Origin: Octopus sinensis
Lineage: Eukaryota
Direction of reading: 5' to 3'
Assembly: GCF_006345805.1 (NCBI RefSeq)
Contig: NC_042997.1
Span: 75,020,001 to 75,084,000 of the forward strand
DNA length: 64,000 bases
Shown here piece by piece: positions 1,916 through 42,324 of the stretch. The position numbers and the translations under genes are program-made. Every line of letters begins with the position of its first letter. Position 1 is the first letter of the stretch. The notes below the pieces were generated by a model that worked only from the letters and a program-made list of their open reading frames with translations, searched no databases and was not told where the DNA came from.

Positions 1916-3700
1916 TGATCCTCAGAGAGGACTGGCTGAAATGTCTCCCCACACCAGACATTGACATAAATCTAGAATGTTTCATGTCTTCTGTGCAAGC
2001 CATATACCAGAAATATGTCCCAGAGCACAAGGCCAAAACAAATAGGAGAAAGATTCCAAGAGAGAGGAAGATCCTCATGAGACGACAGACGAAGGTTGCA
2101 AATCGACTCAACCAACATCTTAAAGTAGCGAAATGTCCCGCTTAAAAACAACACTGATGGAGATTGAAAAAAGGCTGCAATAATCCTATGTGAGGGACAA
2201 AGCAGACAAAGAAGCCTGGGTTATAAAAAAACATTAAATCAAACTCAAAGGCCTTCTTTCATTATGCGAAAGAAACAGCCTCAGTACACTACAAGATAGG
2301 ACCCCTCCTCCAAAAGGATGGCTCCCTCACAGACAGTCCAACTAAGATCAGTGAGATACTGAATGACCAATTTAAAAGTGACTTTACCACCCCGTTGGAA
2401 CACAGACAAGTGAACGAACCAGTGGACTTCTTTGCCACCTCACCTATAACCAACGAGGCAGTTACAATGGAATACATTGACATTAGCGAAGAAGATGGTT
2501 TCCCAGCAATACTCCTCAAAGTATGTAAGCATGCCCTGGCAAAACCCGTCAAGATTCTCTACCAGAGCTTTCTTACAAATGACAAACTGCCAAGAAAGCT
2601 GAAGGTGGCAATAATATGCCCAATACATAAAGGGGGAAGTGGAGCAGATGTCAAAAACTATAGGCCTATCTCTCTAACTTCACACATCAGCAAAGTCATG
2701 GAACGGATAGTCAGAGGGAAACTAATCACATTCCTTGAGGAAAATAACTTCCTGGGTATCACTCAGCATGGTTTTCGACCAGGTAGGAGCTGCCTGACCC
2801 AGTTCTTACAACATTATGACTGGGTGTTGAGGCAGTTACTCAACAAATCAAATGTGGATGTAATATACTTTGATTTTGCAAAATCTTTTGACAAAGTGGA
2901 TCATGGTATGATATGCCATAAACTACGTGACCTCGGCATAGTTGGAAAACTCGGAGTGTGGTTACATGACTTCCTGAAAGACAGGAGTCAGGCAGTAGTG
3001 GTTAATGGAGCCACCTCTATGAACACACAAATAGTGAGCGGTGTTCCACAGGGCACTGTCTTGGGACCACTGCTTTTTATAGTGGGCCTCTCAGATATGC
3101 ACTCAAATGCCCGGATAGCCACTCTGGCCAGCTATGCAGATGATACGAAAGTCTCGCAGAAAATACAGAACTCCAGCAATGTTGCACACCTGCAGCAGAA
3201 GTTGGACTCAATCTACAGATGGGCTGAGGATAATAATATGCAGTTTAATGCTGAAAAATTCCAGGCCCTGCACTACCAGCATCCAAAACTGAATATTAAA
3301 CTTACAGGATACACCGGTCCACAGGGAATTTCAATCCCAGAGCCTAAGTCTGTGAGGAACCTGGGTATCGACATCAGTGATGATACCTCTTTCCAAGTGC
3401 ACATTACCAGGATGGCGACAAAGTGCAGACAACTGGTTGGATGGATCCTAAGAACATTTAGAACCAGAGATAAGGAAATCATGATGGTCCTCTGGCAGAT
3501 ATTCGTCCTCAGCCGCCTGGATTACTGCTCACAGCTATGGTCACCCACCAGTGTGAAATTAACAATGGACCTTGAAGCAATCCAGAGAAGATTCACAAAG
3601 AAGATCGTCTCTTTACAACAGCTCAGCTACTGGGAAAGGTTGAAACAGCTAAGACTGTACTCCCTAGAGAGAAGACGGGAGAGGTATGCAGCAATATATA
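1915..3700 (+). mobile_element. CR1/L2-group LINE, 5'-truncated, reverse transcriptase
   Basis: ORF 2395..3759: NYRPISLTS, QHGFRPGRSC, DFAKSFDKVDH, GVPQGTVLGPLLF, YADD, and CR1-like C-terminus SYWERLKQLRLYSLERRRERY; upstream part broken by stops and frameshifts. Confidence 0.9.
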
Positions 3701-3724
3701 TAACGATGATGATGATGACATACA

Positions 3725-4958
3725 TACATATCATCATCATCATCATCATCATCGTTTAACGTCTGCTTTCCATGCTAGCATAGGTTGGACGATTTTGACA
3801 GAGGGCTGGTGAACCAGATGGCTGCACCAGGCTCCATTCTTGATTTTGGCAGAGTTTCTACAGCTGGATACCCTTCCTAACGCCAATCACTCTGAGAGTG
3901 TAGTGGGTGCTTGTTTTTACATGCCACCGGCACAGGGGCCAGTCAGGGGGTACTGGCAACAACCTTGCTCAAATCGTTTTACACATGCCACCAGCACAGG
4001 TGCCAGTAAGACGCCGTTGGTAACGATCACACTCGAATGGTGCCCTTTTACGGAAGCCATTTGGCTGCTCTGGCAACAATACGCTCGGATGGTGCTCTTG
4101 GCATCCTACTAGCACGGGCACAAGTGCCAGTAAGGCGACGCTGGTAATGATCACGCTAGAATGGTGCCCTTTAAGTGCCACCGGCCCGGAAGCCAGTTAG
4201 CCGCTCTGTCAATGATCACGCTCGTACGGTGCTCTTTGCACCCTGCTAACACAGATGCCAGTCATCAATTTTGATTTTGCTTTTGATTGATTTCACTGGC
4301 CTCAACAGGACTTCACATGCAGAGTTTTAGTGTCCAAAGAAGGAGAGGTACTCATAAGTGGGCTGGTTACGCCCCTGGCATAGGCCATGAGATTATGGTC
4401 TCATTTGGCTTGACGAGTCTTCTCACGCACGGCATATTTCCAAAGGTCTCAGTCACTAGTCTTTTCCTTGGTGAGGCCTAAAGTTCACCACTTCATCCCA
4501 GGTCTTCGTGGGTCTACCACTTCCACAGGTTCCCTCAACCACTAGGGTGTGGCACTTTTTCACACAGCTATCCTCATCCATTCTCACGACATGACCATAC
4601 CAGCGCAGTCGTCTCTCTTGCACTGATGCTTCTTAGGTCCAATATTTCTCTCAAGGTACCTACACTCTGTCGAGTATGCACACTGACATTACACATCCAT
4701 CGGATCATACTGGCTTCATTCCTTGCGAGGTTACGCATGTCCTCAGCAGTCACGGCCCATGTCTCACTGCCATGTAGCATGGCTGTTCATACCCAAGCGT
4801 CATACAGTCTACCTTTTACTCTGAGCGAGAAGCCCTTTGTGGCCAGCAGAGGTAAGAGCTCTCTGAACTTTGCCCAAGCTATTCTTATTCTAGCAGCTAC
4901 ACTTTCAGCGAACCCCCCTCCGCTACTGACTTGGTCCCCTAGGTAACGGAAGCTATTG
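3725..4958 (-). mobile_element. RTE-clade LINE 3' end with (GAT)n tail
   Basis: Frameshifted FRYLGDQV...RIRIAWAKFRELLPLL...MLHGSETWAVTAEDMRNL; 3'UTR with GCCACCGGCAC subrepeats; near-identical family copy at 42445-43558. Confidence 0.85.
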
Positions 4959-5310
4959 TAACACGTAGCCATTTTAGCTATTTTTGAAATAAAGCGGGAA
5001 TTGGCAATATGACGTAATGTCGTATTGCCGAAGAATTATTATTTTCGTTTTTTCCATTGGTTAATATAACTGCTCATAAAGATTCTAAAAAGTTACATAA
5101 AGAATATTTGTAATGGATTTCAATTCATTTAAGTCAAGTTGAGCAGTTATAAAAACCCTGGATTTTGGGAAAAATTTTAGAGTTTGTTGGATGTAACTGA
5201 ACTCCACGACACTCACTCCTTTGAGACATTGGTGATTTTCATGCCATGTCCAAAGAAAATCACTAGTCTATTTTGAATTGTTGATTAATCTATTAGTTAG
5301 ATTTATGAAT

Positions 5311-6300
5311 TAGCTAGTGAATATATAGCCGTACTTCTACACGACGAAAATTATCTTTCCTTTCACATGTACATAATATAAAATATTATATTTATATAAT
5401 AAAACTAATTAAGAAAATGTTTCTCTTCACGTTTTTCTTCAACTGAGTATAAATAAATATGCATTTCTGTAATCATTAAATTATATTTTCTTATAGCAGT
5501 TAAATGAACACGAAGGAAATATTATACATACAAGTCGTTAATATTCATAGCGTTCCATAAGTATATTTCTTTATAGCATTCAGATTTGTGTATAATGATA
5601 ACACTTAAGTTATAAGTGACGTTTTAATCATTATATTCACCCTTACTCAAAAAAGCCAAATAAAATAATCTATTTCCCAATAGAAAGCAATAAATAGCAT
5701 TGCATTACTGTAACAAAACTAAATAGAGAATATACTATAATAATATAACCTAAGAGAAAGCTCAAGGTAGCTTAAAACCACCTATATCAGAAGGCTGCGT
5801 GTTCGAATCATGCATACTATGAAGACGCTATTGTATACCAGTGACAGACAGAACGTCATAACCAACGTCGTCTCCATCTCCGAAGATTTCAACTTGTACA
5901 CAACAAGATAAATACACAGATTTAACTCACGCTGTTAGTGTGAAACTATCACCACGGAAAAACAAATGCAGTATATATATTTGAAAGAGCATCTATATCA
6001 AGAGAAACCTGCACAACAAGTGACTCAACTAATCTCCGCTTCGAGACCCAAATCTTGTTATAGAACTTATTATCGCGTACTACATGAACTGGTAAAATAA
6101 CTCTATCTTAACTCAATATGTTGAGACTTCTCTTATGCTCTGTTGTATTCGCATGCACCTTTATCTGTACCTTTTGTCGCACACACGAACACACAGACAC
6201 AAATATTATACGCATGCATTCATACCACAACACTACACTAGTAATCACAACTCACTTTGTACACTGTGAATAAAATCTATCTTCTCTTTATAAAAGTAGA
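5311..6300 (-). mobile_element. Possible non-autonomous Helitron-like element
   Basis: Minus strand starts TCTACTTTTATAAAAG at 6300; weak CGT/ACG hairpin followed by CTAG near 5313-5345; the base after CTAG is not T. Confidence 0.3.
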
Positions 6301-7859
6301 ACGGTTTTGGCGTCCTTTATTCATTTCCTTTGGCACTGTATAATATATTCATGTATTATGGCTTATATCATTATGTTATGTTAGGATGCGGCCGTGCGGC
6401 ATACAAGAGAAGACTATGTCACCAACCTCCTAACGTACGGTCGTATATATTCAAAATCCTACACTATCAACTACTTCTAGTTAAAATTAGTAGAAGGGTA
6501 CAGATGAATGAAATGACGACAGAGGACAGGAGAAAAGAAATAAGGAAATGAAGAAAGAGAATAAAAAAGAAGCATAAAAGTTCACCATTCAACTTTCCAA
6601 TTGTTTAGATACAAGTCCTTAGGTGCAATCCTGTGTAAATCCATGTAGGTAAAAGTCCTGATAGTGTAAGTATCCAGAAAAAGATGTGAACATATCGAAG
6701 TTCAATAACATAATTAACGGAAGTGGTTATTCAGTGGTAAAAAGAAAGAAAATTACATATGTGGAAGTGGGACAAAATTGGTAACTGGTCAAAATGAATA
6801 ATTTCTGATTCATTGTTATTTTTTCTCATTTTGTACCATTGCATCGTCTGTAGGAGTAAAATTTGCTCAGTATCGGTTACATAGTTGGGAGTAAAAACTG
6901 GTCAATATAGTTTACATCAGAGGTTCTGAACAGGGTCCATACAAAATTTCTGGAGGTCCATAGATGAAATGCAGTAAATTGAGTGTCCACAAGTGGCGTG
7001 CAATCAAGACATGCTAGTCATGCACTGCATGCCCATTGATATTTTGTATAACTCAAAAATTAATTTAAGAACGTAATGTATTTATAACCACATTGAAAAG
7101 TTGTGCACATCATTGGAAACTGAGCTAAAATAGTTACTTTGTCTCAAAGGAAACCCGTCCAGATTGATACTTCACTGTGTTCCCATTTTGCTTCCTCTAG
7201 GCATGCTTAAAGAAAAACGCATAAGAAATCTTTTGTGCCCCCATCTTCCAATCTTTCAATACCTATCATTTCTCTTCTGCCTATCTGTAAAAGTCAATGC
7301 CTGTAAGATTCTTTCTATCTCTATAAAATAACTGCAGAAGCCATGCTTTCGTTAGCTTTGCTCTCCTCTCCCTTTCTATTAGATCATCTTTGTCAACAAT
7401 TCTCTGTAACTGATGCTGCTAACAGGGTTTGACTTTTTGACCCATAAAAATCCTGACCAAAACATATCAACAATCCCATAATTCTTAATTAGTAAGGACA
7501 AATGTTTGGAATATCTATTTCACTCTGTTGTAAGTTTTGAAATTTATTATCATTAACCATCCTTTTGTATGAACAAATTTTCAAACATTCTGAAATCAGA
7601 AATATAATCTATATTATATTTCTGATTTCAGAAATAGCTAATTAATCTTTCATTAATTTACTAAAATTATCTTTCCCTTCATGCTCACACTCACACATGC
7701 ACTATTAGTTTCATAAGATCTCTAGTATTTTTGAAACATTTGTCAAAATGACTGAAATGTGTGTTATAGAAGAAATTTTGAAAAAGTAATTTTTCACAAA
7801 AAGACTTTGAAGGGAAATAATTAATTATAAATGGTGATTGACCAACACAGAAATTACCT

Positions 7860-9440
7860 GATTTGTGAAGCTACAACAAGAAATTCAAGAGACAATTTCA
7901 GGCTAATTTGTATGAAAATAAAAAATGGTTAACTGGTAGTGCTACATTTAATAAGTTATTATGCTGGCTATGCATGTTGTTTTGTCTAGAAAAATATGTT
8001 TGGAATGATAAAGGTTATGATGATTTACATAGTTTATATACGGCTATGCTAAAGCATGAACATTCTCAAAGGCATATAAGATCCTTGATAGATCTTAAAA
8101 CATTCAGAATGTTCACATAGACTTCCAATTAGATGCATCTAAAAAACAGAGCATACAACATCATAATGAGGAAGTTTGACGAAACAGACCCATTCTGTAA
8201 TGATTGATCACTGTAGTTATGTTTTTTAGGTCACCAAGAATTATCATTTTGGGGTCATTTTGAATTTGAAGAATCTAATAATTGTAGAAATTATAAAGAA
8301 CTCTTCAGTAAATATGACGAAAAATTAACAAGCCATCTAGATACAGCTTCTATCTTCTCTGGTCTCTCAAACAGAATTCAAAATGACTTGATCGATGCAA
8401 TTCAAAAGGTTATATTGAATGAAATACAAAATGAACTTAATCAGGCTAAATTTGTTGCTATTGTTGTTGATGAAACATCTGATGTATTGGCATATTCACA
8501 ACTGTCAACTGTTTTACATTATGTTACAGAAGATTGTGTTACGAAAGAACAATTTACCGGTTTTAATGATGTTGGTGCAGATCAATCTGCAAATGCTTTA
8601 TCTGAACATGTTTTTAAATGCTTTGAAACATGGAAATGCAGAAAGAAATTGATTGCACAAACCTATGATGGCACCACTACAATGGCAGAACAATTAAATG
8701 GGTTACAGTCAAAAGTAAGAAAGAAATATGAATGTGTGATCTTTATTCATTGTTGTGCTGATATCCTAAATTTAGTTCTTTCACTATCATGCTCTGCTAA
8801 AAAAGAATGCAAGATTTTTTTTCTACAATAAATGGACTGGGTACATTTTTTTTACAAAATCACCAAAAAGGGTTAATGCATTAGATAACATTGTTAAAAA
8901 AAGATTTCCGAAAGCAACAGCAATTGGATGGAACTACTCATGTCTTATTATCACAAAAGAAAATTATAATTTCATAATCAACCTTTTTGAAGACAGCATT
9001 GAAAATCTTGAAGCATGGGACAATACCACCATACATTCTTTAAAAGTTCCTGATTTCTTATTTTTATTAGAAGTATTCAGTGACATTCACTGATGTCTTA
9101 TTTAACATCCTCTAGAGTAAAAGTCATGACATAGTGTATTGTAAAGAGCAAATAGATAAAACTAGAACTGTGCTCAAAAACAAATTTGACAACATTGATT
9201 TTGTTGAAGCTATGCCAGAACTCTTCAATCTTTGCAAGTTGATTTTGACAATTGTCTACAACTGCTTCTGTAGAGCGATCCTTTTCTGCTTTGAAATGCA
9301 ACAGGAGAAAATAGACTATCTGAGTTAGCACTAATGTTAATTGAAAAAGATTTATTACAACAATTGATGAAAAGAGATATCTATGAAAATGTAATTAATA
9401 TATTTGTTCAGAAAGATCGAAGAATTGAATTGATTTATAA
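7860..9440 (+). mobile_element. Degraded hAT transposase (DUF4371/ZMYM1-like type)
   Basis: SGLSNRIQNDLI...FVAIVVDETSD...QTYDG...IHCCADILNL; C-terminal dimerisation motif LILTI/STTASVERSFSALK across a frameshift; many stops; TIRs not identified. Confidence 0.85.
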
Positions 9441-9789
9441 ATGAGGCAATAACATTTTCGAACACTTTTAAGAAAAATTTTATTGTATTAAAGGGCATTC
9501 TTTCGTTTTAGACTGTAAATTTACAAAATATAAATCAGCTGTTTTATCAGGCTGCTTGCCAATTTCCAGAAAATAATTGACACTCACTTGGGTAGCTTGT
9601 TCTGATACTTATTGAACTCAGTACATTGAAAGACAATGACGCGCGCATACATATACACTGAAATATATATATATAAATATAAACACACACAAACACATTG
9701 AAAGATGTGTGTGTGTGTATGTATAAATCATTTTGTATAAATAATTTTCTTCTACATTCTTTCAAATTTTCTTTCACCATTAGGTAAGT

Positions 9790-11300
9790 GTAATTTACAT
9801 CTCTTCCTTTTCTCCTTGCATGTTGCGATATTTCACATCTTTGCTACTCCCAACAAATGAAAAGAGATGCTACGTTTTTGTTTAGTGTTTTCAGGGCTTT
9901 TCACAATGTTGAATTTTCATACTGTTATGTATTGCTCGACATTGTTATGTCCGGTATTATAATGATGTACTTTGTTGTTGGCTCGACTGGCCCAGACTGC
10001 GTGACTGGTCACAAATGGCATACCTCCCTGACTGCTCCACTCGTGTCTGTGCATTATCTATTTGTAGTGGAAAAGCCCACTTCTCTTGTTTGGGGGATTC
10101 CTCCATAACACATCCCCTTTTGAGATCTTTTTTTCTACACGCAGGATTATATTTTTTTCATTTTCTTTACAGGACCCCAAAAATTTTTTTTTTAAATTTC
10201 TTATCTCAGAAAAGTTAATTATTACATGGAGTTCTCCAATATACACCTATCCGCAATTATTATTTTTTCCACTCTATGTATTACATAGAACAACAAAATC
10301 TTTTTTCAATTTCTCATCACAGAAAAATTTAATTATGACAGTTCTCCAATATACACCTATCAGCAATTATTATTTTTTTTTTTTCAACTCTATGTATTAC
10401 ACATTCAAAACATGCTATTCAAATGTATGCCACAGGTAGTACTGGCTTTACATTCTTACCAGTAGTACTACGAACACATGAGCATCTTGATTGAAATCCT
10501 TTAACAGACTTATATTATTTTTTCTCTGTGTCCCAGGTAGTACTCCAGAAATCCTTCTTCAGCAGAATTGTTATTCATCATATTCTATTATTTCTTTTAT
10601 TTCATAGAATTTTTTCATCACCAAATTTTTTCTTATTGTATCCTGTGGTCATTGGGGAAGGGTATCTTTTTTTCTTCACAAATGTAAATAAACCCAATCT
10701 GTTTCTTAAAGGAGGGACATATTCATTATGCACAGAATGTTATTTACGTCAATGGAGGTAATTGATTGGTTAAAATTGCCGAAATGCAAAAAATTGTAGA
10801 CGAAATATGTTACAACCTATAGAATTTTCTCAATAAAGCCAAGAGAAAATGATGTTTTATAAACACATTCTACCAGTATACGAAGTTTAAAACTTTTTAG
10901 TTACCTAGAAATTATGTTACAAAGTGCCGTTCAAAAGGAAAACATCCGGTCATTGTTGTATCCAGCATGTTTTCAAATTCATGTCACTGAATTTTTCCTT
11001 GTTGTATCCTGCAGTCATTATTGTATCCAGTGTGTTTTCGAATTGTTGTCACTGAATTTTTCTTTGTTGTAGTCTGTGGTCATTATTGTATCCTGCATGT
11101 TTTCAATTTCTTGTTACATGTTATATCCTGCATATGTTTGAAAACTCATCGATACTGTTATGTCTGGTATTATAACGACGTACTTTGTCATTGGCCCAAC
11201 TGGCCCGGATTGCATGACTGGCCTTCATCAGGTGTCTTGGGGAAATTTCGAACCTGGGTTCTCATTCCTAATGGTGTCATTATATTCAAGCCATAGATTA
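9790..11300. repeat. Unclassified repetitive segment with internal subrepeats
   Basis: Diverged ~80-bp direct repeat (about 9935-10030 vs 11146-11230); tandem copies near 10230-10400 and 10960-11110. Confidence 0.4.
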
Positions 11301-11305
11301 CAGTG

Positions 11306-11520
11306 ACCATATCTTCATGGCTGGTGATTTTAATGGACATGTCAGGCAGCACCTGGGTGTCTTCCATGAGTACATGGGGACCATGGAATTGGTTCCCAAA
11401 GTGAAGAGGGAATAAGGTTGCAATTTCGTGATATGAATGGGGTAAGTCAATTACATCGACCCCAGTGTCAACTGGTACTTATTTTACTGACTCCAAAAGG
11501 ATGAAAGGCAAAGTGGACTT
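11306..11520 (+). mobile_element. RTE endonuclease fragment followed by a SINE-like 3' fragment
   Basis: DHIFMAGDFNGHV...HGIG...EEGIRL reading; then gtcaattacatcgaccccagtgtcaactggtacttatttt...ggatgaaaggcaaagt. Confidence 0.6.
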
Positions 11521-11730
11521 TGGTTTGTAAAAGGACGTATTGAATAATGTAGTAATACTGTTTGAAAAAAGGATGAAATGGTTATGGCGTGTTAAGCACT
11601 AACCTAAAAGTAAACAATCAAATAGATTTAAATACTTTATTAACATTATACTTCAGTTCACTGGAGGCCTCTTTCAGAACATTTTTAAAGTACTTATGAA
11701 GAAATCATAAATAAAATAAATCTAACTTAC

Positions 11731-11912
11731 TTTGAAATTTTCTCTATATCCACAAAATTAGGTGGAATAGGTAACACTGTTTTTCCTAAAATTTCACCCA
11801 TACTCAGGTCAATATTTCTTTTCAAAGAATAAGAGGCTTGAATTATATCTTCAGACACAACAGATGGCCAATTTGCATGATTTTTTTTGTTTGTAATTAT
11901 TGGAAGCATAAC
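11731..11912 (-). CDS. Internal exon (182 nt, phase 0 to 2) of a DNAH9/11/17-type axonemal dynein heavy chain, N-terminal tail
   Basis: Acceptor ctatttcag|GTT and donor AA|gtaagt; VMLPIITNKKNHANWPSVVSEDII...GKTVLPIP matches the remembered beta-dynein pattern VLxPLLxNxxNHxxWPxVVSxD...GKTLLPLP. Confidence 0.85.
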
Positions 11913-12209
11913 CTGAAATAGGAAATATATAAAGTAAAAGTACTATTTATACATAGAAAAAACTACAAGAAGAGAAACTTTCTACAGCTATTTGTGATGC
12001 GCTTGCTAGAATGGTGTTATGTTAACAAGCCAAATTATGTGCTGTGTTTTTTTCATAGCACTTAGCATTTTTAATTTACAACATATATTTTTGTAGAATA
12101 CATGTTGTGTATGAATCAAGAAATAACCTGAACAAGAGTTGAAAAGTTTCTTATATATTAGAACATAATTGTTAATTGGTACAGAAATAATCTCTTAATA
12201 AGAAAAATG

Positions 12210-12620
12210 AATTAACCTTTGGAGTGGAGAATTGGGAGATAAATGGGAGGGGTAGTATGTGATATTTGAAAGATAATGTTACTGGGTTTATGAATAGATG
12301 TTAAAAATTTAGGATAGTAATAAATTTTATCAAGGAAGTTGAAATAGTGAGAAAAATGGGGAGCGAATATTAAGTGAGGGTAAGGGTCAATCATATTGTA
12401 GTAGGATGGAAAAGTGGGAATTTCAGGAGAGAAGATGGGTTAGCAGTGGAGAGTGAGTAGTTTCGGTTGAAGAGGCAAAGAAGAGATGAGAGAATGGAAT
12501 TCGAAGAATGAGGATAGGGTGGCTGAAGGGTTGGTGGGGGTGCTGGGTTGGAGGAAATTGGCAAAGGTATTGTTAAGAAGGTTTATGTTACTAGTGTGAT
12601 CAAGCTGTAAGTTGATGACA
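12210..12620 (-). mobile_element. Highly decayed Penelope-like RT fragment
   Basis: FNFLDK...FLTSIHKPSN resembles the PLE thumb motif FLD...T.IYRKPT. Confidence 0.35.
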
Positions 12621-12919
12621 ATTGTAAATAGGCAATCACATAGATTTTACAAAGTAGGCAAATGATGCATAGTACCTGTGTTTACACAAAATGATTACAT
12701 CTGAAAATCTATCTAGCTATCTATCCATCTATCTATCTATATGTAATAATAAAGAGTAAAATTAATTAATCAATTAATAATTAATAATTTTACCAAGTAG
12801 TTCGGTATGTTAAAAGAACCATTATCGGTAACCTTATACAAAAATTCTATAATTATAAGCATAATTATAATTAGGGTTCATAATTATAATTATGCTTATA
12901 ATTATAGAAATTTTGTGTG

Positions 12920-12976
<57 letters not shown>

Positions 12977-13220
12977 TCTCTCTCTCTCTCCTTTCTTCAC
13001 TACCTTTGTATTTCTCTTCCAGTCTCTTTCTTTCTTACACTCACAGTCTTTCTCTCTCTCTTTCTCTGCTTTTCTTGACTACCTCTCTCTTATCCTCCTC
13101 CTTCCCTCTCAGTCTCTGCACAGCCAGCCATATTTCTCTATCCTCTCTCTGCTTATCCTCACTTCCTTTCCCTCTCAGCCTCTCTCTCTCTCTGCATATC
13201 TGTCTCTGCTTCTTCCTGAC
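12920..13220. repeat. (CA)n followed by (CT)n-rich tract
   Basis: Direct reading. Confidence 0.9.
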
Positions 13221-13229
13221 ATTTTTTCT

Positions 13230-15080
13230 CCCTGTTTCAGTAACATGGACCTCAGCAAAGCCAACTGCATGGAAGACAGCATAAGATTCCAATTCAGAGA
13301 AACTAGCAGGTCCGAAATATCAAGACAATGCTCCTCATACAGAACTTTATAGAAGGATTGCCACCAAACACTCTAATTGCAGAGGCCCTGAAAAGTCCTG
13401 GATTTCATCAAACCATGGCTTCAATCAAAAGAAAAAGAATTCGTTCATTTGCTCATATGCTTTAATACAACTGCACATGGAGTTACTAGAGAAAATATTT
13501 GAAGAGGAAGCAAAAGGATGTAAAAGAAACAAGTGACACAATGAAATCAGGGTGATGCTGTGAAGGAGGAACAGAACAAAGCAGATATTATCACCCTGGA
13601 AAAAATGTGAATCCAAGAAGAAGAAAGCAAAGGTCCACCAGGAGAAATAAAAGAAGCCAAATACAAAGGCACAAGCAAGTAGGCAAACTGAAAATGGATG
13701 TGGGCCCAAGGTGGGTACAGAAACAAATGTAAAACAAAATAGAACTTGCGAAGACAATGGTTATGATAAAAAGAAAGCCCAACCAGTCTGCAAGTTCTAT
13801 GCAAAGGGAACCTACTGGCATGGAGACATTGGAACAGGCTGCATCTCAAGCCCCATGTGAGCGGTACTCATTTCATTCACCCCAAGACTGCTTCTAATGA
13901 CAAAGGTCTAGATCACAAGATACAATGCCACCACCATGGAAATGTGTGGATGATGCATGCACTGCTCCTAAAAGGAAACACATGGTGGATGCAGTACGGA
14001 CAGCAGCTGCTGAACAGTGTGACTCAGATGTATAAGGCAGCTGACCTGGCTTCAATAGATATCGAGTCTGAGAAACAATTACTCAAACAACAAATGAACT
14101 AGGGTGGCCATTCTTATCCTCTGCAGATGTCAAACCAGAAGCTACTACCTAAACTCTATATGACAGGAGAAAAAGGACTCATGGTGGAGTTGCAATGTAT
14201 ATCCAGGAAGATATCACTCCTGTGGTTCTGCTGTCACACTCAAACTCAGTCTGTGACACACTGGTGGTACACACTAAACAGGTGAAAATAGTAATATGTA
14301 CTACATATCACCAACCAGATGCTCCAAATTATGGGGACACATTTCAAGAGAGCCTCCAAAAAGTGAAAGAAGTGTTAACCAAACCGAATAAAAGCATGCA
14401 CATACTTCTTCTAGGAGACTTCAAACTCCTAAATGTCAAATGGCTTTCTCTCAGCTATGTCACTGTATGGCCTAAGGCATGAAGAATGATCTCACACACA
14501 TGTTCTTTATGGAGTAAATAATGTTCTACCCAACAAGAAAAGAAATGTCTTGGATTCTGCTTCACATTTGGCGCTCATCCATAATATGGTGTCACTGATG
14601 ATTTTCTCAAACCATAACTTGATAAAACTAACAATGTATGGTCTGCAGAAAACTACAGACTTCTTCAAGTACCCAACCCCTCTCCAACCTGAACTTCCAC
14701 AAAGTTCATTGGAAGGTATTGAGAAAGAGGTCATTGAACAAAACTGGTCTACCAGTCTCTCTACACAAGATGTTGACAAAAAGCTGCAGCAATTTATGGC
14801 AATCATGCACAATATGTGCAGTAAGTTTGCTCCAGAAAGAATGCCAAACCAACAGAAAAGTTTAATTCCTTGGGATAAGAAGATTCTAATTAGACAACAA
14901 GCTAAAATCTCAAATCTTCTAAATGGACCACTGAAGGATAGCAAATGATATTCTCTGAAACAAATATTGCTCCATGAAAATGAGAGGGCAGAAAAAGAAA
15001 CCAGCGCTGTCAAACATATTAAGACAAACCTTAAACCATTCTATAGATATGCAAAAGAGTCTGCTTTAGTACAGTACAAA
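13230..15080 (+). mobile_element. Degraded CR1-like LINE 5' half (CCCH-type ORF1 remnant, endonuclease, linker)
   Basis: VCKFYAKGTxxHG remnant; DRRKRTHGGVAMY, ICTTYHQP, LLGDF endonuclease motifs; KKILIRQQAK linker matches 2050-2100. Confidence 0.75.
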
Positions 15081-20248: not shown

Positions 20249-20650
20249 TACAAGGTGGCCATAAAGTTTGGATACATAGGAAATATCATTAATCTTTTTT
20301 TTTCCACATATGAGTTGATGGACATGAGGGATTGTCACATCAACACATAGCAGATGCTTTCAATACACCTCACCCCACAAGGATCCCCATTGCCTTTCTC
20401 ACAGAGGGGAAGATAGTTAAGAAATTCAAAGAAACAGGCAGTGTCTTGGGTGAACCCCATTCTGGATATCCAACAATAATGGTTGAAATGAAAAAAGCTG
20501 GCATGGCTAGGGTTTGTTATAATACTTCACAGGACATCAAAGAAGCTGAGTGTTCACCAAAAGCATACACATCAGACACCTTAGAAAAGAGAAATTTCAT
20601 ACATACAAGTCACAAATCTGCTGCAGACAAACACAAGCCTTTTAATACAC
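20249..20650 (+). mobile_element. Tc1/mariner 5' fragment (TIR-like start plus HTH region)
   Basis: TACAAGGTGGCCATAAAGT start; KIVKKFKETGSVL...SGYP motif. Confidence 0.6.
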
Positions 20651-21012
20651 AGAGTGTGTCAGTTTTTTGAGGCCATTTCTATGAATTTAGAAAAAGATAC
20701 ATAGCTCATCAAAGAAAAGCTACATCATCTTTTTTGATGTCATTGGATTTCCTGTGAAGGAGCCATCCTTTTGGAAGAGGGGCCCTATCTTGTAATGTAG
20801 GCTGTTTCTTTGGCAATGTTAAAGAAAGCTTTAAGGTTTGACTTTATATTTTCTATAACCCAGGCTTCCTTATCTACTCCCTCTTTTTCAGGGATCGAGG
20901 CAGACTTTTCTCAATCTCTAACAGTGTTCTTTTCAGGCAGGACTTTTCACTACTTTTGAGATGTTTGTTCAGGTGGTTTGCAATCTTTGTCTGTTGTCTC
21001 ATAAGAATTTTC

Positions 21013-23916
21013 GGTTAATATAGGGCGTGACAAATATCGGAAAATCAAAAAAAAAATGTGTGTAATAGGTGTAAAACAACTTCCTATGAACGAATATGAA
21101 AAAAAAAATTCGCGCACGCGAAAGGGGGGTGGGGGAGAGGCCTCGGAAAATTCACATCGGGAAGTTCCGAAAGCGTCTGAGGGGCTGACCCGGGCACCAA
21201 AACAAAAAAAAAATTGTGTAATATGTGTAAAACAACTTGCTCTAAACGAATATGAAAAAAAAAATTCGCTCTCGAGAAAGAGGGGTGGGGGAGAGGCCTC
21301 GGAAAATTTATGTCGGGAATTTCCGAAAGCGTCTGAACCGGGCACAAAAACAAAAACAAAAACAGCGTAATAGGTGTAAAAAAAATTGCTCTAAACGACT
21401 ATCATGAAAAAAATGCGCGCTCGCGAAAGGGGGGTGGGGGAGAGGCTTCGGAAATTCACACATGAATCATAAACTCCGTATTTTTGTACATATTTCGCAA
21501 AAAAAAAAAAATAATAAAGAGAAGAAATTCTGAAATAGTGTAATATGTGTAAAACAACTTGCTCTAAACGAATATGAAAAAAAAAATGCGCTCTCGAGAA
21601 AGAGGGGTGGGGGAGAGGCTTCGGAAATTCATACATGAATCATAAACTCCGTATTTTTGTACATATTTCGCAAAAAAAAAAAAAATAAAGAGAAGAAATT
21701 CTGGAAAAAGTGAAGAAATGTTGGATCTCTGCCATGTGAATCAAAATACGTGTCAGAAACATCTTGAAATACTACAGAAATTATGTTACGAAAATGATAA
21801 TGTATACATACCTCTTTGAGTGGTCCATCGACAGTGTTGATAAAGAAATGAGATGGGTTGCGTTTAGAGGAAAAAATTATCGCGGGCCAGGATAAAACTT
21901 AACGCTTGTGTATCTACGACTGAAATGAATATATGAACTTGTTCTGTACCAAGGAGCGGAAATCCTCCACACCAGAAGAATGGATGAGTAAACACTGGTC
22001 AATGAAAGGTCAGTCTTTTGTCTTGAATAGAACTTGTTACCAACTATCGTCTTGTAAACAACTGTTCTTAGACAAAAGACTGACCTTTCTTGAATAGAAC
22101 TTGGTACCAACTATCGTCTTGTAAACAACTGTTCTTAGACAAAAGACTGACCTTTCATTGACCAGTGTTTACTCATCCATTCTTCTGGTGTGGAGGATTT
22201 CCCGCTCCTTGGTACAGAACAAGTTCATATATTCATTTCAGTCGTAGATACACAAGCGTTAAGTTTTATGATAGAGAGTGGCCCTTTGCAATTCATGTGA
22301 ATTAACATTACAGGATGGGATTCGCCGATTTACTAATGACATTGAGGCATTGGATTTTTTTCGAAAACATAATATCATTCCCCGCACAGTTGACTGCCCT
22401 AGATGCAATTTACCATGTACATTGCAAGGAAATACAAACATCTTCCGATGTGGAAGGACTGTTCGCCGTCGAAGGCAACGGCCAACACAATGTCGATATT
22501 CAATATCCCTATACAGCAATACATTTTTGGGGAAGAGCCAGCTATCACCAGGTCAAATCTTGTTATTTGTAAATTACTTCCTCATAGACGGTTGGTCGCA
22601 CTCATTAGCCGTTGAAAATTTGAAAATTTCGTATTCGACCTCAATCGATTGGCGATCCTTCTGCTCCGAGGTTTGTCAACATTGGGTAGAGAATTACCAG
22701 GACCAAATCGGTGGACCAGGAGTTGAAGTGGAGATCGACGAATCTGTTATTGTAAGGAGGAAATACAATCGAGGAAGACTGACAAAAACTATCTGGCTCT
22801 TCGGTGGAATCGAGCGGGTAGCCAAAAAGAAATTTTTGATACCTCTTTCATCTGAGTGTGGTGAAGAGGAAAGGCGAGATGCCGCCACACTGATCCCCTT
22901 AATTACCCGATATATACGCCAAGGGTCGGTAGTATATAGTGATTCTTGGGGTGCTTATAACTCTCTTGGAAATATCGGGTATACTCACTTCCGCGTCAAC
23001 CACAGCGAAAACTTTGTGGATCCGACAAACACGTCGGTGCACACGCAGACAATAGAGAGATTGTGGGGGTCAGTGAAGAAATCGGTTGTTCGCCCAGGCA
23101 TTCGTGCCTGTTACCTAAAACAATACATGGCGAAGTTCCTTTTTTTGGACAGCATCAGACCTGCTGCCAAGAGAATACACGTATTCTTATTGGCAGCAGC
23201 AAGTCTTTATCCTGGCCCGCGATAATTTTTTCCTCCAAACGCAACCCATCTCATTTCTTTATCAACACTGTCGATGGACCACTCAAAGAGGTATGTATAC
23301 ATTATCATTTTCGTAACATAATTTCTGTAGTATTTCAAGATGTTTCTGACACGTATTTTGATTCACATGGCAGAGATCCAACATTTCTTCACTTTTTCCA
23401 GAATTTCTTCTCTTTATTATTTTTTTTTTTGCGAAATATGTACAAAAATACGGAGTTTATGATTCATGTGTGAATTTCCGAAGCCTCTCCCCCACCCCCC
23501 TTTCGCGAGCGCGCATTTTTTTCATGATAGTCGTTTAGAGCAATTTTTTTTACACCTATTACGCTGTTTTTGTTTTTGTTTTTGTGCCCGGTTCAGACGC
23601 TTTCGGAAATTCCCGACATAAATTTTCCGAGGCCTCTCCCCCACCCCTCTTTCTCGAGAGCGAATTTTTTTTTTCATATTCGTTTAGAGCAAGTTGTTTT
23701 ACACATATTACACAATTTTTTTTTTGTTTTGGTGCCCGGGTCAGCCCCTCAGACGCTTTCGGAACTTCCCGATGTGAATTTTCCGAGGCCTCTCCCCCAC
23801 CCCCCTTTCGCGTGCGCGAATTTTTTTTTTCATATTCGTTCATAGGAAGTTGTTTTACACCTATTACACACATTTTTTTTTTGATTTTCCGATATTTGTC
23901 ACGCCCTATATTAACC
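21013..23916 (+). mobile_element. Merlin-superfamily (IS1595-related) DNA transposon with very long modular TIRs
   Basis: Ends GGTTAATATAGGGCG / CGCCCTATATTAACC; 8-bp TSD GAATTTTC at 21005-21012 and 23917-23924; arms about 21013-21900 and 23201-23916; central transposase. Confidence 0.95.
22278..23225 (+). CDS. Merlin/ISXO2-like DDE transposase, 315-codon open frame, no in-frame 5' ATG
   Basis: Zn-ribbon Cys40/43/58/72; IGGPGVEVEIDES (D154), RKYNRGR, WLFGGIER, VYSDSW (D222), VNHSENFVDP, HTQTIERLW (E260); the only Met is residue 284. Confidence 0.9.
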   Translation: MALCNSCELTLQDGIRRFTNDIEALDFFRKHNIIPRTVDCPRCNLPCTLQGNTNIFRCGRTVRRRRQRPTQCRYSISLYSNTFLGKSQLSPGQILLFVNYFLIDGWSHSLAVENLKISYSTSIDWRSFCSEVCQHWVENYQDQIGGPGVEVEIDESVIVRRKYNRGRLTKTIWLFGGIERVAKKKFLIPLSSECGEEERRDAATLIPLITRYIRQGSVVYSDSWGAYNSLGNIGYTHFRVNHSENFVDPTNTSVHTQTIERLWGSVKKSVVRPGIRACYLKQYMAKFLFLDSIRPAAKRIHVFLLAAASLYPGPR

Positions 23917-25549
23917 GAATTTTCTTCTCCCCAGGAATCTTGTTTGTGTGTGTGTGTTCTGGGACAGATCTGTCACATATGGCTTGCATTACGGACATGA
24001 AATGTTTGAAGCTTGATGTCAATGTCTGGTGTGGAAAGACATTTAAGCCAACCTTGTTTCAGAATCTTTCTCAATTGACATCCATTCAGCTGTGCTTTGT
24101 ACAGGCTGTATGGCTGTAGGGGCTTTTGGTTAATCTATTATGTTGTGATCTGAGACTAGTGCCAGTGTCACTTTCATATTATGGATGACATCCATATTGT
24201 GAAGCAGAGATCTAGTATATTATTTACCTTGGTTGGTTGCAGCACAATTTGCTCCATGAATGAAGCATTGCTAAGGTGGATCAGGGACACTACCAGTACT
24301 TGTTGGCAATATGTCATTCCTAAGACTATTAAGCTCTCAGACCATCCCACAAAGAAAAACACTGATGTGTTGCTCTAGTTTGGTGAGAACTTTTATCTTT
24401 GCAAGGCAGTCCTCAAACTTACCTCTGTGATTTGGAATAGCTGGTGGGCAATATGTAGTACATATAACAAGTTGTATGTTGTGTACAATTTGAGTATCGC
24501 ACACTGAATTTGAATATGACAGCAGAACCTGAGGTATGAGGTCCTCTCATATGTATACTGCAACTCCACCAGGGCTCCTTTCTTTTCTGCCTATTCATAT
24601 TGCAACATATTTTGGTGTGTGTACATCTGCATCCCCTATATCAGGTCTTAGATGCATTTCCACAAACGCTAAGCATAGAGCTTGATTGCATGTAGCAAGG
24701 TCTCTCTGGAAAGAGATTTCTGTTTTGCAGTTGAGGTGCAACAGACCTCTGATGTTTAAAAGCAATATTTGTGTAATGCCTGTGTTGGTGTTCATGGTGG
24801 CCATCCTGTATCAGTTGTATGTGGTGGTGGGTGTGGTTTCAAGTTTGTGCTTGTAGCCAGGTCAGCTGCTGTACAATCTATTGTGCCATACACAAAAACG
24901 AGTTTTGTTCAGCTGCTACCTTTTTCACATCTCGATGAGGCTGGCTGTGTGTTGGGGCACATACTATATCTGCATATCATCTTTGGGGAGTAGACAGTGT
25001 GCAGTTTTTTCTTCTTTGGTGTCTTTCCTTTTGTCCTCTTCCTGGAAAGATGTTTTGTTTTAGGCCCATGCAGTTTTGGTAGGGTTTGGTAGTTTGCACT
25101 ATCATCATCGTGTCAACAGTTTCCTTGCAGGTAAAATCTGCATATGCTTTTGCTTTTACTTTCTTTTGTACCTCCTGTTTCTTTTGTTGGAGATCTAGCA
25201 AAAGTTCTTTGTTTTTTTTCCATTTCCTTTTCTTTTAACCCCTTGCTCTCCCTTTTTCTGAGAGCTTTTGCTTTGTCATTTATGACCTTTTGTTTTCTTC
25301 CTTTTCCAGCCCTCTCAAATCTTTGATTGTCTACTGTAGTGAGGGGGAGGGCCAGTATCAGTGTTTCTTTCATTTGCAGGCCTCTCAGTTGTGGCTTTGG
25401 ATTTGCTCTTTTGAGGGACCAGTGGGACCTTGAGGATTTTTTGTTCCTTTTCACTTTCTCCATTCTTTTTGACATCCTTGCTACAATCAGTTCCCAGAAT
25501 GGCATCAAGGATGTCAATGTGCTGTCTAATGAGATCATAGAAATTTGAA

Positions 25550-40299: not shown

Positions 40300-40650
40300 T
40301 AACACATAATACTAAAATAGTGGAGAAGATAGGATATTCCTATGGGCTCGCTCTAGGCAAGAAGTTGAACATTTTTTTTGCCCATGAAACTACATGGACC
40401 CTAAATAAGGCATGTGTAAAATTTGAATGAAATTAGTTGTGTAGTTCTCAAGTTTTAGGGAATCGTATTGGAGAAGATATGATATTGTTGTGGGCTCGCC
40501 CTAGGCAAAAAGTTAAAAACTTTTTTTGCCGATGACACACCCCGGACCCTACGTAAGGCATGTGTAAAATTTGAATGAAATTGGTTGTGCAGTTCTCAAG
40601 TTTTAGGGAAACACACAGACAGACACACACACACACACACATTCTCAGTT
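40300..40650 (-). mobile_element. Helitron-like 5' fragment with a ~150-bp internal tandem duplication
   Basis: Minus strand tatataaaactgagaatgtgtgtg...tctgtctg start; 40343-40461 repeated at 40492-40610. Confidence 0.45.
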
Positions 40651-40721
40651 TTATATATATATATAAAGATATACATATATATATACATATATATATATAC
40701 ATATACGTATGTATATATATG

Positions 40722-40792
<71 letters not shown>

Positions 40793-40906
40793 GTATATAT
40801 ATATGTATATATTAGGATATATATATATATTATATATATGTATATATATATGTATAATATATATATATAATATATATTATATATATGTATATATATATAT
40901 GTATAT

Positions 40907-40955
<49 letters not shown>

Positions 40956-42324
40956 ATATATATGTATATATATATGTATATATATATATTATATATGTAT
41001 ATATATATATATAATATATCATATATATATATATATATGTATATATATTATGTAGAAAAATGCAAAAATGGGACAAGAACGTAAGAAGACGATACAAAAA
41101 TCACGGACGGGACATTCGAAGTCTTCAATCTTCAGTCAAGAACTGGATCATCCTAGCAATTTTTGCTGATTAATCTTGAGATCGCTCCGATCCGGCCAGC
41201 CCCAAGGAAAAACTAAGCTACGAGCATTAGATTTCTTTGAAAAAGGATCGAATGTATACGTATATGTATATAATGGCAATGATTCGATAATGGCAATGTT
41301 TCGTTTGTCGCAGCACACGTCATAATGGCAATGTATATATTATATATAATATATATAATATATATATATATATATTATTGCGCCGCACGTGGGACTGCGA
41401 TGCTACCACAGGTTCCCACACAAGCAGTCCGCAGTTTCCTGCGCATGCGACAACACTCAGCAAATCAGAAACCCACTCCGGACGGTGAAGTAGTGAAACG
41501 TACCCAGTAGAGCCAACCATAACAACAATATTAACACAAACAAAACATTGTGTCGTCAAAGTATTTCTTTCAACAAAACATTCAACAATAGGTCTTTAGA
41601 AAGTTCTATTTTCTTTCCTTCGTTCCTTTAAAAACATATTTCACATATAAGAACAAAGTTCTTTTTTCTTTTCCTTATTTTCTTTTCAAACATTTAACGT
41701 CACAATGTTTTCCTTTTTTCTTTAAACAGTTAACATCACAAAGTTCGTTTCTCAAAAAACATTTAATAACACAGTCATTTTGCTTCGTTCTTTTCTTTTT
41801 TTTTAAATACACATTTAACGGCAATAGTTCTTTCGTTTTATGTCTGCAACTTCGGCGAAAGCTAGCTAAGCACAGTATCTTACTACATCACTTGCCAGTC
41901 GTTAAGATGTCCGTCTCTCGCTCCGTGTATCTCTCTCTGCCCCTGTTTGTTTCTCAACTCAGCGCTACCCGTATGTATGGGGCCGTCCAGCCAGTGCATG
42001 TTTCCCTTCTAAAACTCGGTTACTCTATCATTGTCTTTATCTTCTTTAAACTCTCTGTGACCGTAGAGGGCCAGAGTACAAGTGCCTACGGCCATAAACA
42101 ACCGTGCTGCTTGACAACGCAATGGAAATACCACTGGCCTGAACATCTAGAACACCATTTCGAAACCAGCTAATGAAGGGAAAAGGGACATAATGTTTTT
42201 GTTGGTTTTTTTTTGCGTTCGTATATCAATATATATATATTACATATATATATATGTTACATATACATATATTACATGTATACATATATTACATAGATAT
42301 GTATATAAATTACATATACATATG

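What the first reader, a model, noticed from the sequence alone, without database searches (positions are those of the whole stretch)
21013..23916. Young fold-back Merlin transposon with ~0.7-0.9-kb modular TIRs and an uninterrupted transposase frame
Seen: GG...CC termini, a perfect 8-bp TSD (GAATTTTC), and arms so similar that the track's ORFs 21056..21370 and 23559..23873 translate identically. The left arm holds four ~150-170-bp G-tract-containing subunits and the right arm three. The arms extend into the last codons and stop of the transposase. Known: Merlin elements are IS1595-related with 8-9-bp TSDs, and the TIRs originally described were shorter (tens to a few hundred bp, from memory). 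Inference: a recently mobile, Foldback/Galileo-like Merlin lineage, possibly polymorphic in the population.
Basis: partly seen in the sequence, partly recalled or inferred. Interest (0 to 1): 0.85.

Follow-up and report, generated by a model that had tools for sequence, protein, structure and literature searches.

The report
Long-armed Merlin transposon copy in octopus
This is a real, recently inserted 2.9-kb "Merlin" cut-and-paste transposon in what is almost certainly an octopus genome. It is an ordinary member of a known kind: Merlins with 1-kb repeat-filled arms are already catalogued, and this copy has lost its ATG start codon.

Summary
Window 21013-23916 is a 2,904-bp element with GG…CC termini, a perfect 8-bp target-site duplication (GAATTTTC), and inverted arms that match at 709 of 711 shared positions. 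The left arm has four ~150-175-bp G-tract units and the right arm three. A 315-codon open frame encodes an IS1595/Merlin DDE transposase.

An older repeat copy at 1933-2341 spans the joined flanks without a gap and carries one copy of the 8-mer, so it acts as an in-window empty site.

- The frame starts with GTG just after in-frame stops, and the first in-frame ATG is codon 284. An Octopus vulgaris copy, 85% identical, starts with Met at that position.
- A near-perfect 378-bp palindrome lies between the left arm and the ORF.
Repbase Merlin-1_DR and Merlin-N5_DR have 1,000-bp TIRs containing tandem repeats, and a 2026 O. vulgaris annotation lists two recently active Merlin families.

New inferences:
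- The left arm is an inverted copy of the native 3' end, because it contains the last codons and the stop.
- The unit core motif is conserved in a family whose transposase is only 64% identical.

Verdict: new member of a known kind, low-to-moderate interest.

The parts
21005..21012 (.). Left copy of the 8-bp target-site duplication, GAATTTTC
   Evidence: Read directly. 8/8 identical to 23917-23924. The paralogous site has a single 8-mer.
21013..21040 (+). Left terminal 28 bp, GGTTAATATAGGGCGTGACAAATATCGG (5'-GG terminus)
   Evidence: Only two matches in the window, the two termini; 0 expected by chance. The start resembles the 26-bp TIR of relative L006, GGTAAATGTGAAGCTG….
21041..21700 (+). 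Left-arm array of four units: S1 21041-21198, S2 21199-21347, S3 21348-21520, S4 21521-21700. Each has a ~97-nt core: GTGTAATAGGTGTAAAACAA…TTCGCGCNCGCGAAAGGGGGGTGGGGGAGAGGCCTCGGAAAATTCACA.
   Evidence: S4 is a chimera: its core matches S2 (92/98) and its tail matches S3, which points to unequal exchange between units.
21701..21898 (+). Inner, non-repeated part of the left arm. It is an inverted copy of the 3' non-coding region plus the last ~7 codons and stop of the transposase.
   Evidence: L 21633-21896 = R 23469-23206, 262/264. The right-hand counterpart is homologous to the 3' flank of two related families.
21892..22269 (.). Internal near-perfect palindrome: ~132-nt arms, with a 67-bp tandem duplication (22021-22154) at the centre.
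   Evidence: I11, I12, D3; DNA hairpin -168.6 kcal/mol, z = -30.9. No other copy in the window.
22278..23225 (+). Merlin/IS1595-type DDE transposase frame: 315 codons plus TAA. Catalytic D154 (22737-22739), D222 (22941-22943), E260 (23055-23057). Putative zinc ribbon H31/C40/C43/C58/C72. First codon is GTG, not ATG.
   Evidence: Pfam PF12762, E = 3.9e-15. 915 homologues; full-length against them. AF2 model pLDDT 92.6 with an integrase/transposase-like core. No in-frame ATG before codon 284. 85% identical to O. vulgaris XP_029643201.1, which begins with Met-Ala-Leu-Cys.
23203..23888 (-). Right arm. Inner unique part ~23203-23401, overlapping the last codons and the stop. Three units: 23402-23581, 23582-23730, 23731-23888.
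   Evidence: The innermost unit's motif sits ~240 bp after the stop. The same motif sits ~220 bp after the stop in L001/L002.
23889..23916 (-). Right terminal 28 bp, the exact reverse complement of the left terminus (ends …CC).
23917..23924 (.). Right copy of the 8-bp target-site duplication, GAATTTTC
1933..2341 (-). Paralogous, uninterrupted copy of the repeat into which the Merlin inserted. It serves as an in-window empty site.
   Evidence: BLASTN 74.7% over 411 bp across the joined flanks. Gap-free across the junction with one 8-mer, GGATCTTC.

Best explanation
This is one copy of a Merlin-superfamily (IS1595-related) DNA transposon in a cephalopod genome, most likely Octopus.

How it moves. 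By analogy with other DDE elements, the transposase would bind the element ends, cut the element out and insert it at staggered cuts 8 bp apart. Repair of those cuts made the GAATTTTC duplication. The protein has an N-terminal Cys/His zinc-ribbon-like region plus helices, and an RNase-H-fold DDE core with D154, D222 and E260.

Where it landed. It inserted into an older interspersed repeat.

How the long arms arose (inferred). The ~0.7-0.9-kb arms were not built symmetrically. The right arm is the native 3' end: the last codons, the stop, ~180 bp of 3' non-coding sequence, an array of ~150-175-bp units and the 28-bp terminus. The left arm is an inverted duplicate of that 3' end, which replaced the original 5' end. 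The element therefore transposes on two '3' ends'. Unit number then drifts by unequal exchange: 4 against 3, and the extra unit is an S2/S3 chimera.

What the units do (inferred, about even odds). The unit core is conserved in a family whose transposase is only 64% identical. It most likely carries extra binding sites for the transposase or a host factor that help pair the ends.

State of this copy. Its transposase frame starts with GTG and has no usable ATG. It is most likely a recently inserted copy that has lost autonomous expression and could move only with transposase supplied by sister copies.
For: Shown by tool results or read directly from the sequence:
- TSD, termini and arm identity.
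- Paralogous empty site with a single 8-mer.
- PF12762 domain. Full-length alignment to 67 relatives, with D154/D222/E260 at least 90% conserved and H31/C40/C43/C58/C72 invariant.
- AF2 model with pLDDT 92.6. Its best PDB matches are retroviral integrase, ISCth4 and IstA cores.
- Host: 85% identity to O. vulgaris XP_029643201.1 from the supplement of PMC8101967, which begins with Met at the GTG position. Next-best relatives are sea-slug proteins and unnamed run assemblies.
- Direction of the arm duplication. The inverted repeat runs into the coding sequence and stop. The stretch after the stop is homologous to the 3' flank of the P0001 and P0002 families. L001 has 726 bp upstream of its ORF with no inverted copy of its 3' flank. 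A complete relative, L006, has only 26-bp TIRs, an 8-bp TSD and G/C-tract units on the 3' side only.
- Motif conservation. The 16-mer ATGTGAATTTTCCGAG matches exactly in L001 and L002, ~220 bp after the stop. In the window it lies ~240 bp after the stop. Both contigs end just after it, as assemblies do at repeats.
- TCGGAAAAT occurs 6 times in the 64 kb, all inside the element. One copy per arm lies at the inner edge of the terminal 28 bp.
- Chimeric fourth unit.
- No ATG.
Against: - No second copy of this exact family could be retrieved. The window holds a single copy, and the protein collection returned nothing above 66% identity. Family copy number, consensus, typical arm structure and the ancestral start codon are therefore inferred from one decayed O. 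vulgaris protein.
- The terminal 44 bp show no significant overall similarity to the units beyond the 9-mer (scores fall within the shuffle range).
- Many Merlin families carry internal tandem repeats with no known role (PMC8101967), so the units may be neutral minisatellites.
- The L001/L002 evidence is a single motif at a contig end.
- GTG in a good context (A at -3, G at +4) could still allow weak initiation, or it could be a sequencing error.
- Transposase binding, excision and integration were not tested.
Confidence: 0.8

Rival explanations
1. The copy is fully autonomous and active. The transposase is translated from the GTG (near-cognate initiation, perhaps as self-limitation), or the G is a sequencing or assembly error for ATG.
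For: The frame is otherwise intact, full-length and has all catalytic residues. The context is favourable: A at -3, G at +4. The arms are 99.7% identical and the TSD is perfect. PMC13282606 reports recently active Merlin insertions in O. vulgaris.
Against: All 67 aligned relatives and the O. vulgaris copy have Met at this position. In-frame TGA and TAG lie immediately upstream, and there is no other ATG before codon 284. Non-AUG initiation is usually inefficient in animals (general knowledge).
Confidence: 0.15
2. The repeated units are neutral minisatellite expansions in the subterminal region. Only the ~28-bp termini matter for transposition.
For: Internal tandem repeats with variable copy number are common in Merlin families, with no function assigned. 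One example is 4 against 3 units of 163 bp in two Symbiodinium copies (PMC8101967). Unit number differs between the two arms here. Relative L006 works with 26-bp TIRs, as its intact TSD shows.
Against: The unit core motif is kept exactly (16/16) at the same distance from the stop in a family with only 64% protein identity. L006 also has G/C-tract units 3' of its ORF. The 9-mer TCGGAAAAT is shared by the terminus and the units, and is unique to the element in 64 kb.
Confidence: 0.4
3. A short-TIR Merlin is nested inside, or captured between, the arms of an unrelated foldback/MITE-like element. On this view the long arms are not Merlin sequence.
For: Arms make up 55% of the element. An additional palindrome lies inside it.
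Against: The inverted repeat is continuous from the terminus into the transposase's last codons. There is no inner TIR/TSD pair, only spurious pairs at palindromic 8-mers inside the repeats. The inner arm and the unit motif are homologous to the native 3' flanks of related Merlin families. The outer terminus resembles the L006 Merlin TIR.
Confidence: 0.04
4. The inverted left arm is an assembly artefact, for example a chimeric or fold-back read.
For: Long near-identical inverted repeats are a known source of assembly error. No reads are available here.
Against: The arms differ by a 173-bp unit and two substitutions. The outer ends carry a matched 8-bp duplication. The two flanks are contiguous in a paralogous repeat copy. 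An artefact would not produce these features.
Confidence: 0.03

Closest known systems
Merlin superfamily of eukaryotic DNA transposons (Feschotte 2004; surveyed in PMC8101967), related to bacterial IS1016/IS1595
   Same: DDE_Tnp_IS1595 domain, conserved DDE triad, 8-bp TSD, TIRs starting 5'-GG, and a single ~315-aa transposase ORF.
   Different: The arms (711-884 bp) are longer than the 24-462 bp of the original description. The left arm is an inverted copy of the 3' end, coding tail included. This clade has an invariant Cys/His zinc-ribbon pattern, although Merlins are said to lack Zn_Tnp_IS1595.
Repbase Merlin-1_DR and Merlin-N5_DR (Danio rerio)
   Same: Both are Merlin elements listed with 1,000-bp TIRs that contain tandem repeats mirrored in both arms: N5_DR has 113 bp x 5.2 at 531-1114 and 3193-3775; 1_DR has 44/99-bp repeats at both ends. 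This is the same architecture, long modular TIRs.
   Different: Different host (fish) and different family. Merlin-1_DR is ~10 kb and Merlin-N5_DR is non-autonomous.
Octopus Merlin families (PMC13282606, O. vulgaris repeat annotation; protein XP_029643201.1 in PMC8101967)
   Same: Same host group. The transposase is 85% identical to XP_029643201.1. The two 'recently active' Merlin families have 11 insertions totalling 28,998 bp, a mean of ~2.6 kb, close to this 2.9-kb copy.
   Different: That paper gives counts only. It describes no arm structure, unit array or start codon. Whether this copy belongs to one of those two families could not be checked.
L006 relative (ENA metagenome contig, transposase P0029, 48% identical)
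   Same: A complete Merlin with a GG… terminus similar to the window's, an 8-bp TSD (GTTGAATG), and G/C-tract units downstream of the ORF.
   Different: Only 26-bp TIRs and 1,963 bp in total. The units are on the 3' side only. This is the likely ancestral layout.
Foldback / Galileo-type long-TIR elements (own knowledge: Galileo = P superfamily, 7-bp TSD, TIRs up to ~1.2 kb with internal tandem repeats)
   Same: Long, nearly identical arms carrying tandem sub-repeats whose number varies. The arms make up more than half of the element.
   Different: Unrelated transposase (IS1595-type rather than P/THAP) and an 8-bp TSD. This is convergence in architecture, not membership.

Membership tests
Merlin superfamily | Transposase with the DDE_Tnp_IS1595 (PF12762) catalytic domain | tested here: met
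   E = 3.9e-15, 56.6 bits against a cut-off of 27. All 14 aligned relatives hit it.
Merlin superfamily | Conserved D-D-E catalytic triad in the three Merlin blocks | tested here: met
   D154 (VEIDES), D222 (YSDSW) and E260 (TIERLW), each at least 90% conserved in 68 sequences. The model has an RNase-H-like core.
Merlin superfamily | 8- or 9-bp target-site duplication | tested here: met
   GAATTTTC x2. The paralogous site has a single 8-mer.
Merlin superfamily | Terminal inverted repeats beginning 5'-GG | tested here: met
   GGTTAATATAGG… and its reverse complement, …CCTATATTAACC.
Merlin superfamily | TIR length within the described range (24-462 bp in Feschotte 2004; up to 1,000 bp in Repbase entries) | tested here: met
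   711/884 bp exceeds the 2004 range but lies within the Repbase range listed in S1 Table of PMC8101967.
Autonomous (self-sufficient) element | Complete transposase gene with an ATG start | tested here: not met
   Codon 1 is GTG. In-frame TGA and TAG lie upstream. The first in-frame ATG is codon 284. Relatives start with Met.
Autonomous (self-sufficient) element | Demonstrated excision or insertion activity, or polymorphic insertions | not testable with these tools
   No reads, population data or other genomic copies were available.
Galileo / P-superfamily foldback elements | P-type (THAP-containing) transposase and 7-bp TSD | tested here: not met
   The transposase is IS1595-type and the TSD is 8 bp. 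The definition of Galileo is from my own knowledge.
Foldback-like architecture (structural class, not a family) | Very long TIRs built of tandem sub-repeats and making up most of the element | tested here: met
   Arms of 884 + 711 bp are 55% of 2,904 bp. There are 4 and 3 units.
IS1595 family N-terminal domain | Zn_ribbon_IS1595 (PF12760) | tested here: inconclusive
   The window protein has no hit at E <= 1. Ten of 14 relatives hit weakly (best E = 0.0031). H31/C40/C43/C58/C72 are invariant in 68 sequences.

The most novel reading that the evidence does not exclude
Cephalopods may carry a still-mobile Merlin lineage that rebuilt its 5' end from an inverted copy of its 3' end. On this reading, the conserved ~100-nt unit core (palindromic TTCGCG…CGCGAA, a G-tract, and TCGGAAAAT) is an array of transposase-binding modules needed for end pairing. 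That would be the first defined subterminal binding-site architecture for any Merlin/IS1595 element. The GTG start might also act as a built-in brake on expression.
Probability: 0.15. Interest if true: 0.45.

Novelty: new member of a known kind. Interest (0 to 1): 0.27.

Why it matters
It matters little for biology at large. Merlin elements, long modular TIRs within Merlin, and recently active Merlins in octopus are all already on record.

It has modest value for transposon specialists:
- It is a clean, datable example with its own paralogous empty site.
- It shows how a long-TIR element can arise by inverted duplication of one end, coding tail included.
- It offers a candidate conserved subterminal motif that could be tested as a binding site.

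No Merlin/IS1595 transposase matched a solved structure by sequence, and I know of no biochemical study of one. An intact-looking octopus copy could therefore serve as a starting point for one.

Tried and rejected
- Other copies in the window: none found, by BLASTN or TBLASTN.
- Closer relatives in the protein collection: the best hit is 66% identical. The 85%-identical O. vulgaris protein was found only through a paper's supplement.
- TIRs around relatives: L001-L005 and L007 gave no GG…CC plus TSD pair. Only L006 was complete.
- Rfam scan of 20500-24500: no match at E <= 1, so the units are not a known RNA.
- Bacterial promoter/terminator scan: not meaningful in a eukaryote, and ignored.
- Similarity between the terminal 44 bp and the units: not above shuffles, apart from one shared 9-mer.
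- PDB sequence search: no hit.
- Looking up the Logan run accessions in the literature: nothing found, so the hosts of P0001 and P0002 remain unnamed.
- Literature search for 'long TIRs' plus Merlin: nothing specific. The bioRxiv DDE survey had no TIR data.
- The internal palindrome as an inserted TA-flanked MITE: the flanks allow it, but the palindrome itself makes the TA ambiguous and no other copy exists in the window. Left open.
- Possible homology of the ~25 nt before the start codon with the P0001 family: too short to judge.
Full report
**Observation**

The region was read directly. The element runs from 21013 to 23916 (2,904 bp).

- **Termini and TSD.** It begins GGTTAATATAGGGCGTGACAAATATCGG and ends with the exact reverse complement. 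These are the only two matches in the 64-kb window, and none is expected by chance. GAATTTTC flanks it on both sides, at 21005-21012 and 23917-23924.
- **Arms.** A gapped alignment of the left arm against the reverse complement of the right arm gives 447/447 identities for 21013-21459 against 23916-23470. It gives 262/264 for 21633-21896 against 23469-23206. The left arm has one 173-bp block (21460-21632) that the right arm lacks.
- **Units.** The G-tract motif GGGGGTGGGGGAGAGGC occurs four times in the left arm, three times in the right arm, and nowhere else in the window. Tandem Repeats Finder and the repeat finder give unit periods of 156, 149 and 173 bp.
- **Overlap with coding sequence.** The right arm starts at about 23203-23206, inside the coding sequence; the stop is at 23223-23225.

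**An in-window empty site**

I joined the two flanks with a single copy of the 8-mer and searched the window. The join aligns at 74.7% over 411 bp to window 1933-2341 on the minus strand, right across the junction. The alignment has no gap at the junction when one 8-mer is kept, and needs an 8-bp gap when both are kept. The paralogue reads GGATCTTC where the target is GAATTTTC.

The element therefore inserted into a pre-existing interspersed repeat and duplicated 8 bp. This also makes an assembly artefact very unlikely.

**What the ORF is**

- The 315-codon frame at 22278-23225 hits Pfam DDE_Tnp_IS1595 (PF12762, E = 3.9e-15). It has 915 homologues at E <= 0.001.
- It aligns end to end with them.
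- D154, D222 and E260 are conserved in at least 90% of 68 sequences. H31, C40, C43, C58 and C72 are invariant.
- An AlphaFold model built on that alignment is confident (mean pLDDT 92.6). Its best PDB matches are retroviral integrase cores and the ISCth4 and IstA transposases, i.e. an RNase-H-fold DDE enzyme.
- No solved structure matches by sequence.
- Ten of 14 relatives weakly match the IS1595 zinc ribbon (PF12760, best E = 0.0031). The window protein does not.

**Host**

The supplement of PMC8101967 contains Octopus vulgaris XP_029643201.1. It is 85% identical to the window ORF over 267 residues and shares the first 33 residues exactly apart from residue 1. The window is otherwise rich in non-LTR retrotransposon ORFs and microsatellites. 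It is therefore almost certainly from an octopus.

**The start codon**

Translated with the standard code, the frame begins with Val (GTG).

- The two codons before it are TAG and AGA, with TGA just before those.
- The only in-frame Met is codon 284.
- ATGs in the 380 bp upstream open only short frames.
- Relatives begin with Met at this position, and so does the O. vulgaris copy.

The simplest reading is an A-to-G change in the start codon of this copy. The context (A at -3, G at +4) would allow weak near-cognate initiation. That, or a base-calling error, remains possible.

**The internal palindrome**

Between the left arm and the ORF lies a 378-bp near-perfect palindrome (21892-22269). A 67-bp tandem duplication sits at its centre. 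As single-stranded DNA it folds at -168.6 kcal/mol (z = -30.9). It has no other copy in the window. Its origin, whether an inserted hairpin element or a local fold-back duplication, is unresolved.

**How the long arms arose**

The inverted repeat includes the last seven codons and the stop, so the right arm must be the original and the left arm the copy. Comparisons with relatives support this:

- The ~150 bp after the stop is recognisably homologous to the 3' flank of two related families, P0001 and P0002 (66% and 64% protein identity).
- The unit core motif ATGTGAATTTTCCGAG is present exactly in L001 and L002, about 220 bp after their stop. In the window it lies about 240 bp after the stop. 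Both contigs end a few bases later.
- L001 has 726 bp upstream of its ORF with no inverted copy of its 3' flank.
- One complete relative, L006 (48% identity), has 26-bp TIRs starting GGTAAATGTG…, an 8-bp TSD (GTTGAATG), a length of 1,963 bp, and G/C-tract units only downstream of the ORF.

The likely history has three steps. First, an ancestor had short TIRs and a 3' subterminal unit array. Second, the 3' ~0.7 kb was duplicated in inverted orientation and replaced the 5' end. Third, unit number changed by unequal exchange. The fourth left-arm unit supports the last step: its core matches S2 (92/98) and its tail matches S3.

**Function of the units**

The case for function:

- The core is conserved across families.
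- The 9-mer TCGGAAAAT is shared by the terminus and the units. It occurs six times in the window, all inside the element.

The case against:

- The terminus and the units show no other significant similarity.
- Internal tandem repeats are common in Merlins and have no assigned role.

I give roughly even odds to binding-site modules against neutral minisatellites.

**Comparison with what is known**

- Merlin is defined by the IS1595-type DDE domain, 8-9-bp TSDs and GG-initiated TIRs of 24-462 bp in the original description. All of the defining features are met here.
- The arm length exceeds the 2004 range. However, S1 Table of PMC8101967 lists Repbase Merlin-1_DR and Merlin-N5_DR with 1,000-bp TIRs that contain mirrored tandem repeats, and Merlin-1N1_LVa with 325 bp.
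- PMC10294476 notes that, among molluscs, Merlin is found mostly in cephalopods.
- PMC13282606 counts 18 Merlin families (2.19 Mb) in O. vulgaris. Two are recently active, with 11 insertions totalling 28,998 bp.

Galileo/Foldback is only an architectural analogy.

**Verdict**

This is a genuine, well-bounded, recently inserted Merlin copy with long modular arms. It probably cannot make its own transposase. It is a new member of a known kind.

The points that add something are the 3'-to-5' inverted-duplication origin of the arm, the conserved unit motif, the missing ATG and the inner palindrome. None could be generalised, because no sister copies were accessible.

Noticed in passing
window 1933-2341 (-) and 2395-3759 (+): A second, uninterrupted copy of the repeat that the Merlin landed in (74.7% over 411 bp). 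It lies next to a 454-aa ORF with a reverse-transcriptase domain, so the target repeat may be part of a retroelement.
   Followed up: partly
window 52792-55546 (-) and 58128-60578 (-): Long ORFs with RVT_1, Exo_endo_phos and zf-RVT domains. These are non-LTR (LINE-type) retrotransposon copies in a GC-richer stretch (0.42-0.56 GC).
   Followed up: partly
window 46272-47578; 1603-1914; 40652-41048; 40321-40610: A 1.3-kb (ACAC/TACA)n block with strong GC skew, two (TA)n runs of 300-400 bp, and a 148-bp unit repeated twice.
   Followed up: no
window 22368-22493 (codons 31-72 of the transposase): H31, C40, C43, C58 and C72 are invariant in 68 relatives, and 10 of 14 relatives weakly match Zn_ribbon_IS1595. 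The literature, however, states that Merlins lack this domain. This clade probably keeps an IS1595-like zinc ribbon.
   Followed up: partly
window 23285-23345, mirrored at about 21757-21817; L001 ~1745-1822; L009 ~1103-1160: The 3' non-coding stretch shows splice-like signals (AG|GTATGT … TTTCTGTAG) conserved in three Merlin families. This may be a small 3'-UTR intron or some other constrained element.
   Followed up: no
L003 (Elysia chlorotica RQTK01001207.1) 4294-13838: At least six Merlin transposase fragments plus one near-full copy lie in a row within 10 kb, partly merged into annotated 'genes'. This looks like a local cluster or tandem array of decayed Merlins.
   Followed up: no
L006 5106-5488: The short-TIR relative carries its own nested 74-nt inverted repeat, long poly-G/poly-C tracts and two G/C-tract units downstream of the ORF.
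   Followed up: partly
protein search: The 85%-identical NCBI protein XP_029643201.1 (O. vulgaris) did not appear among the hits; the best was 66%. The host's own sequences seem to be absent from the searchable collection, so copy-number statements cannot be made from these tools.
   Followed up: no
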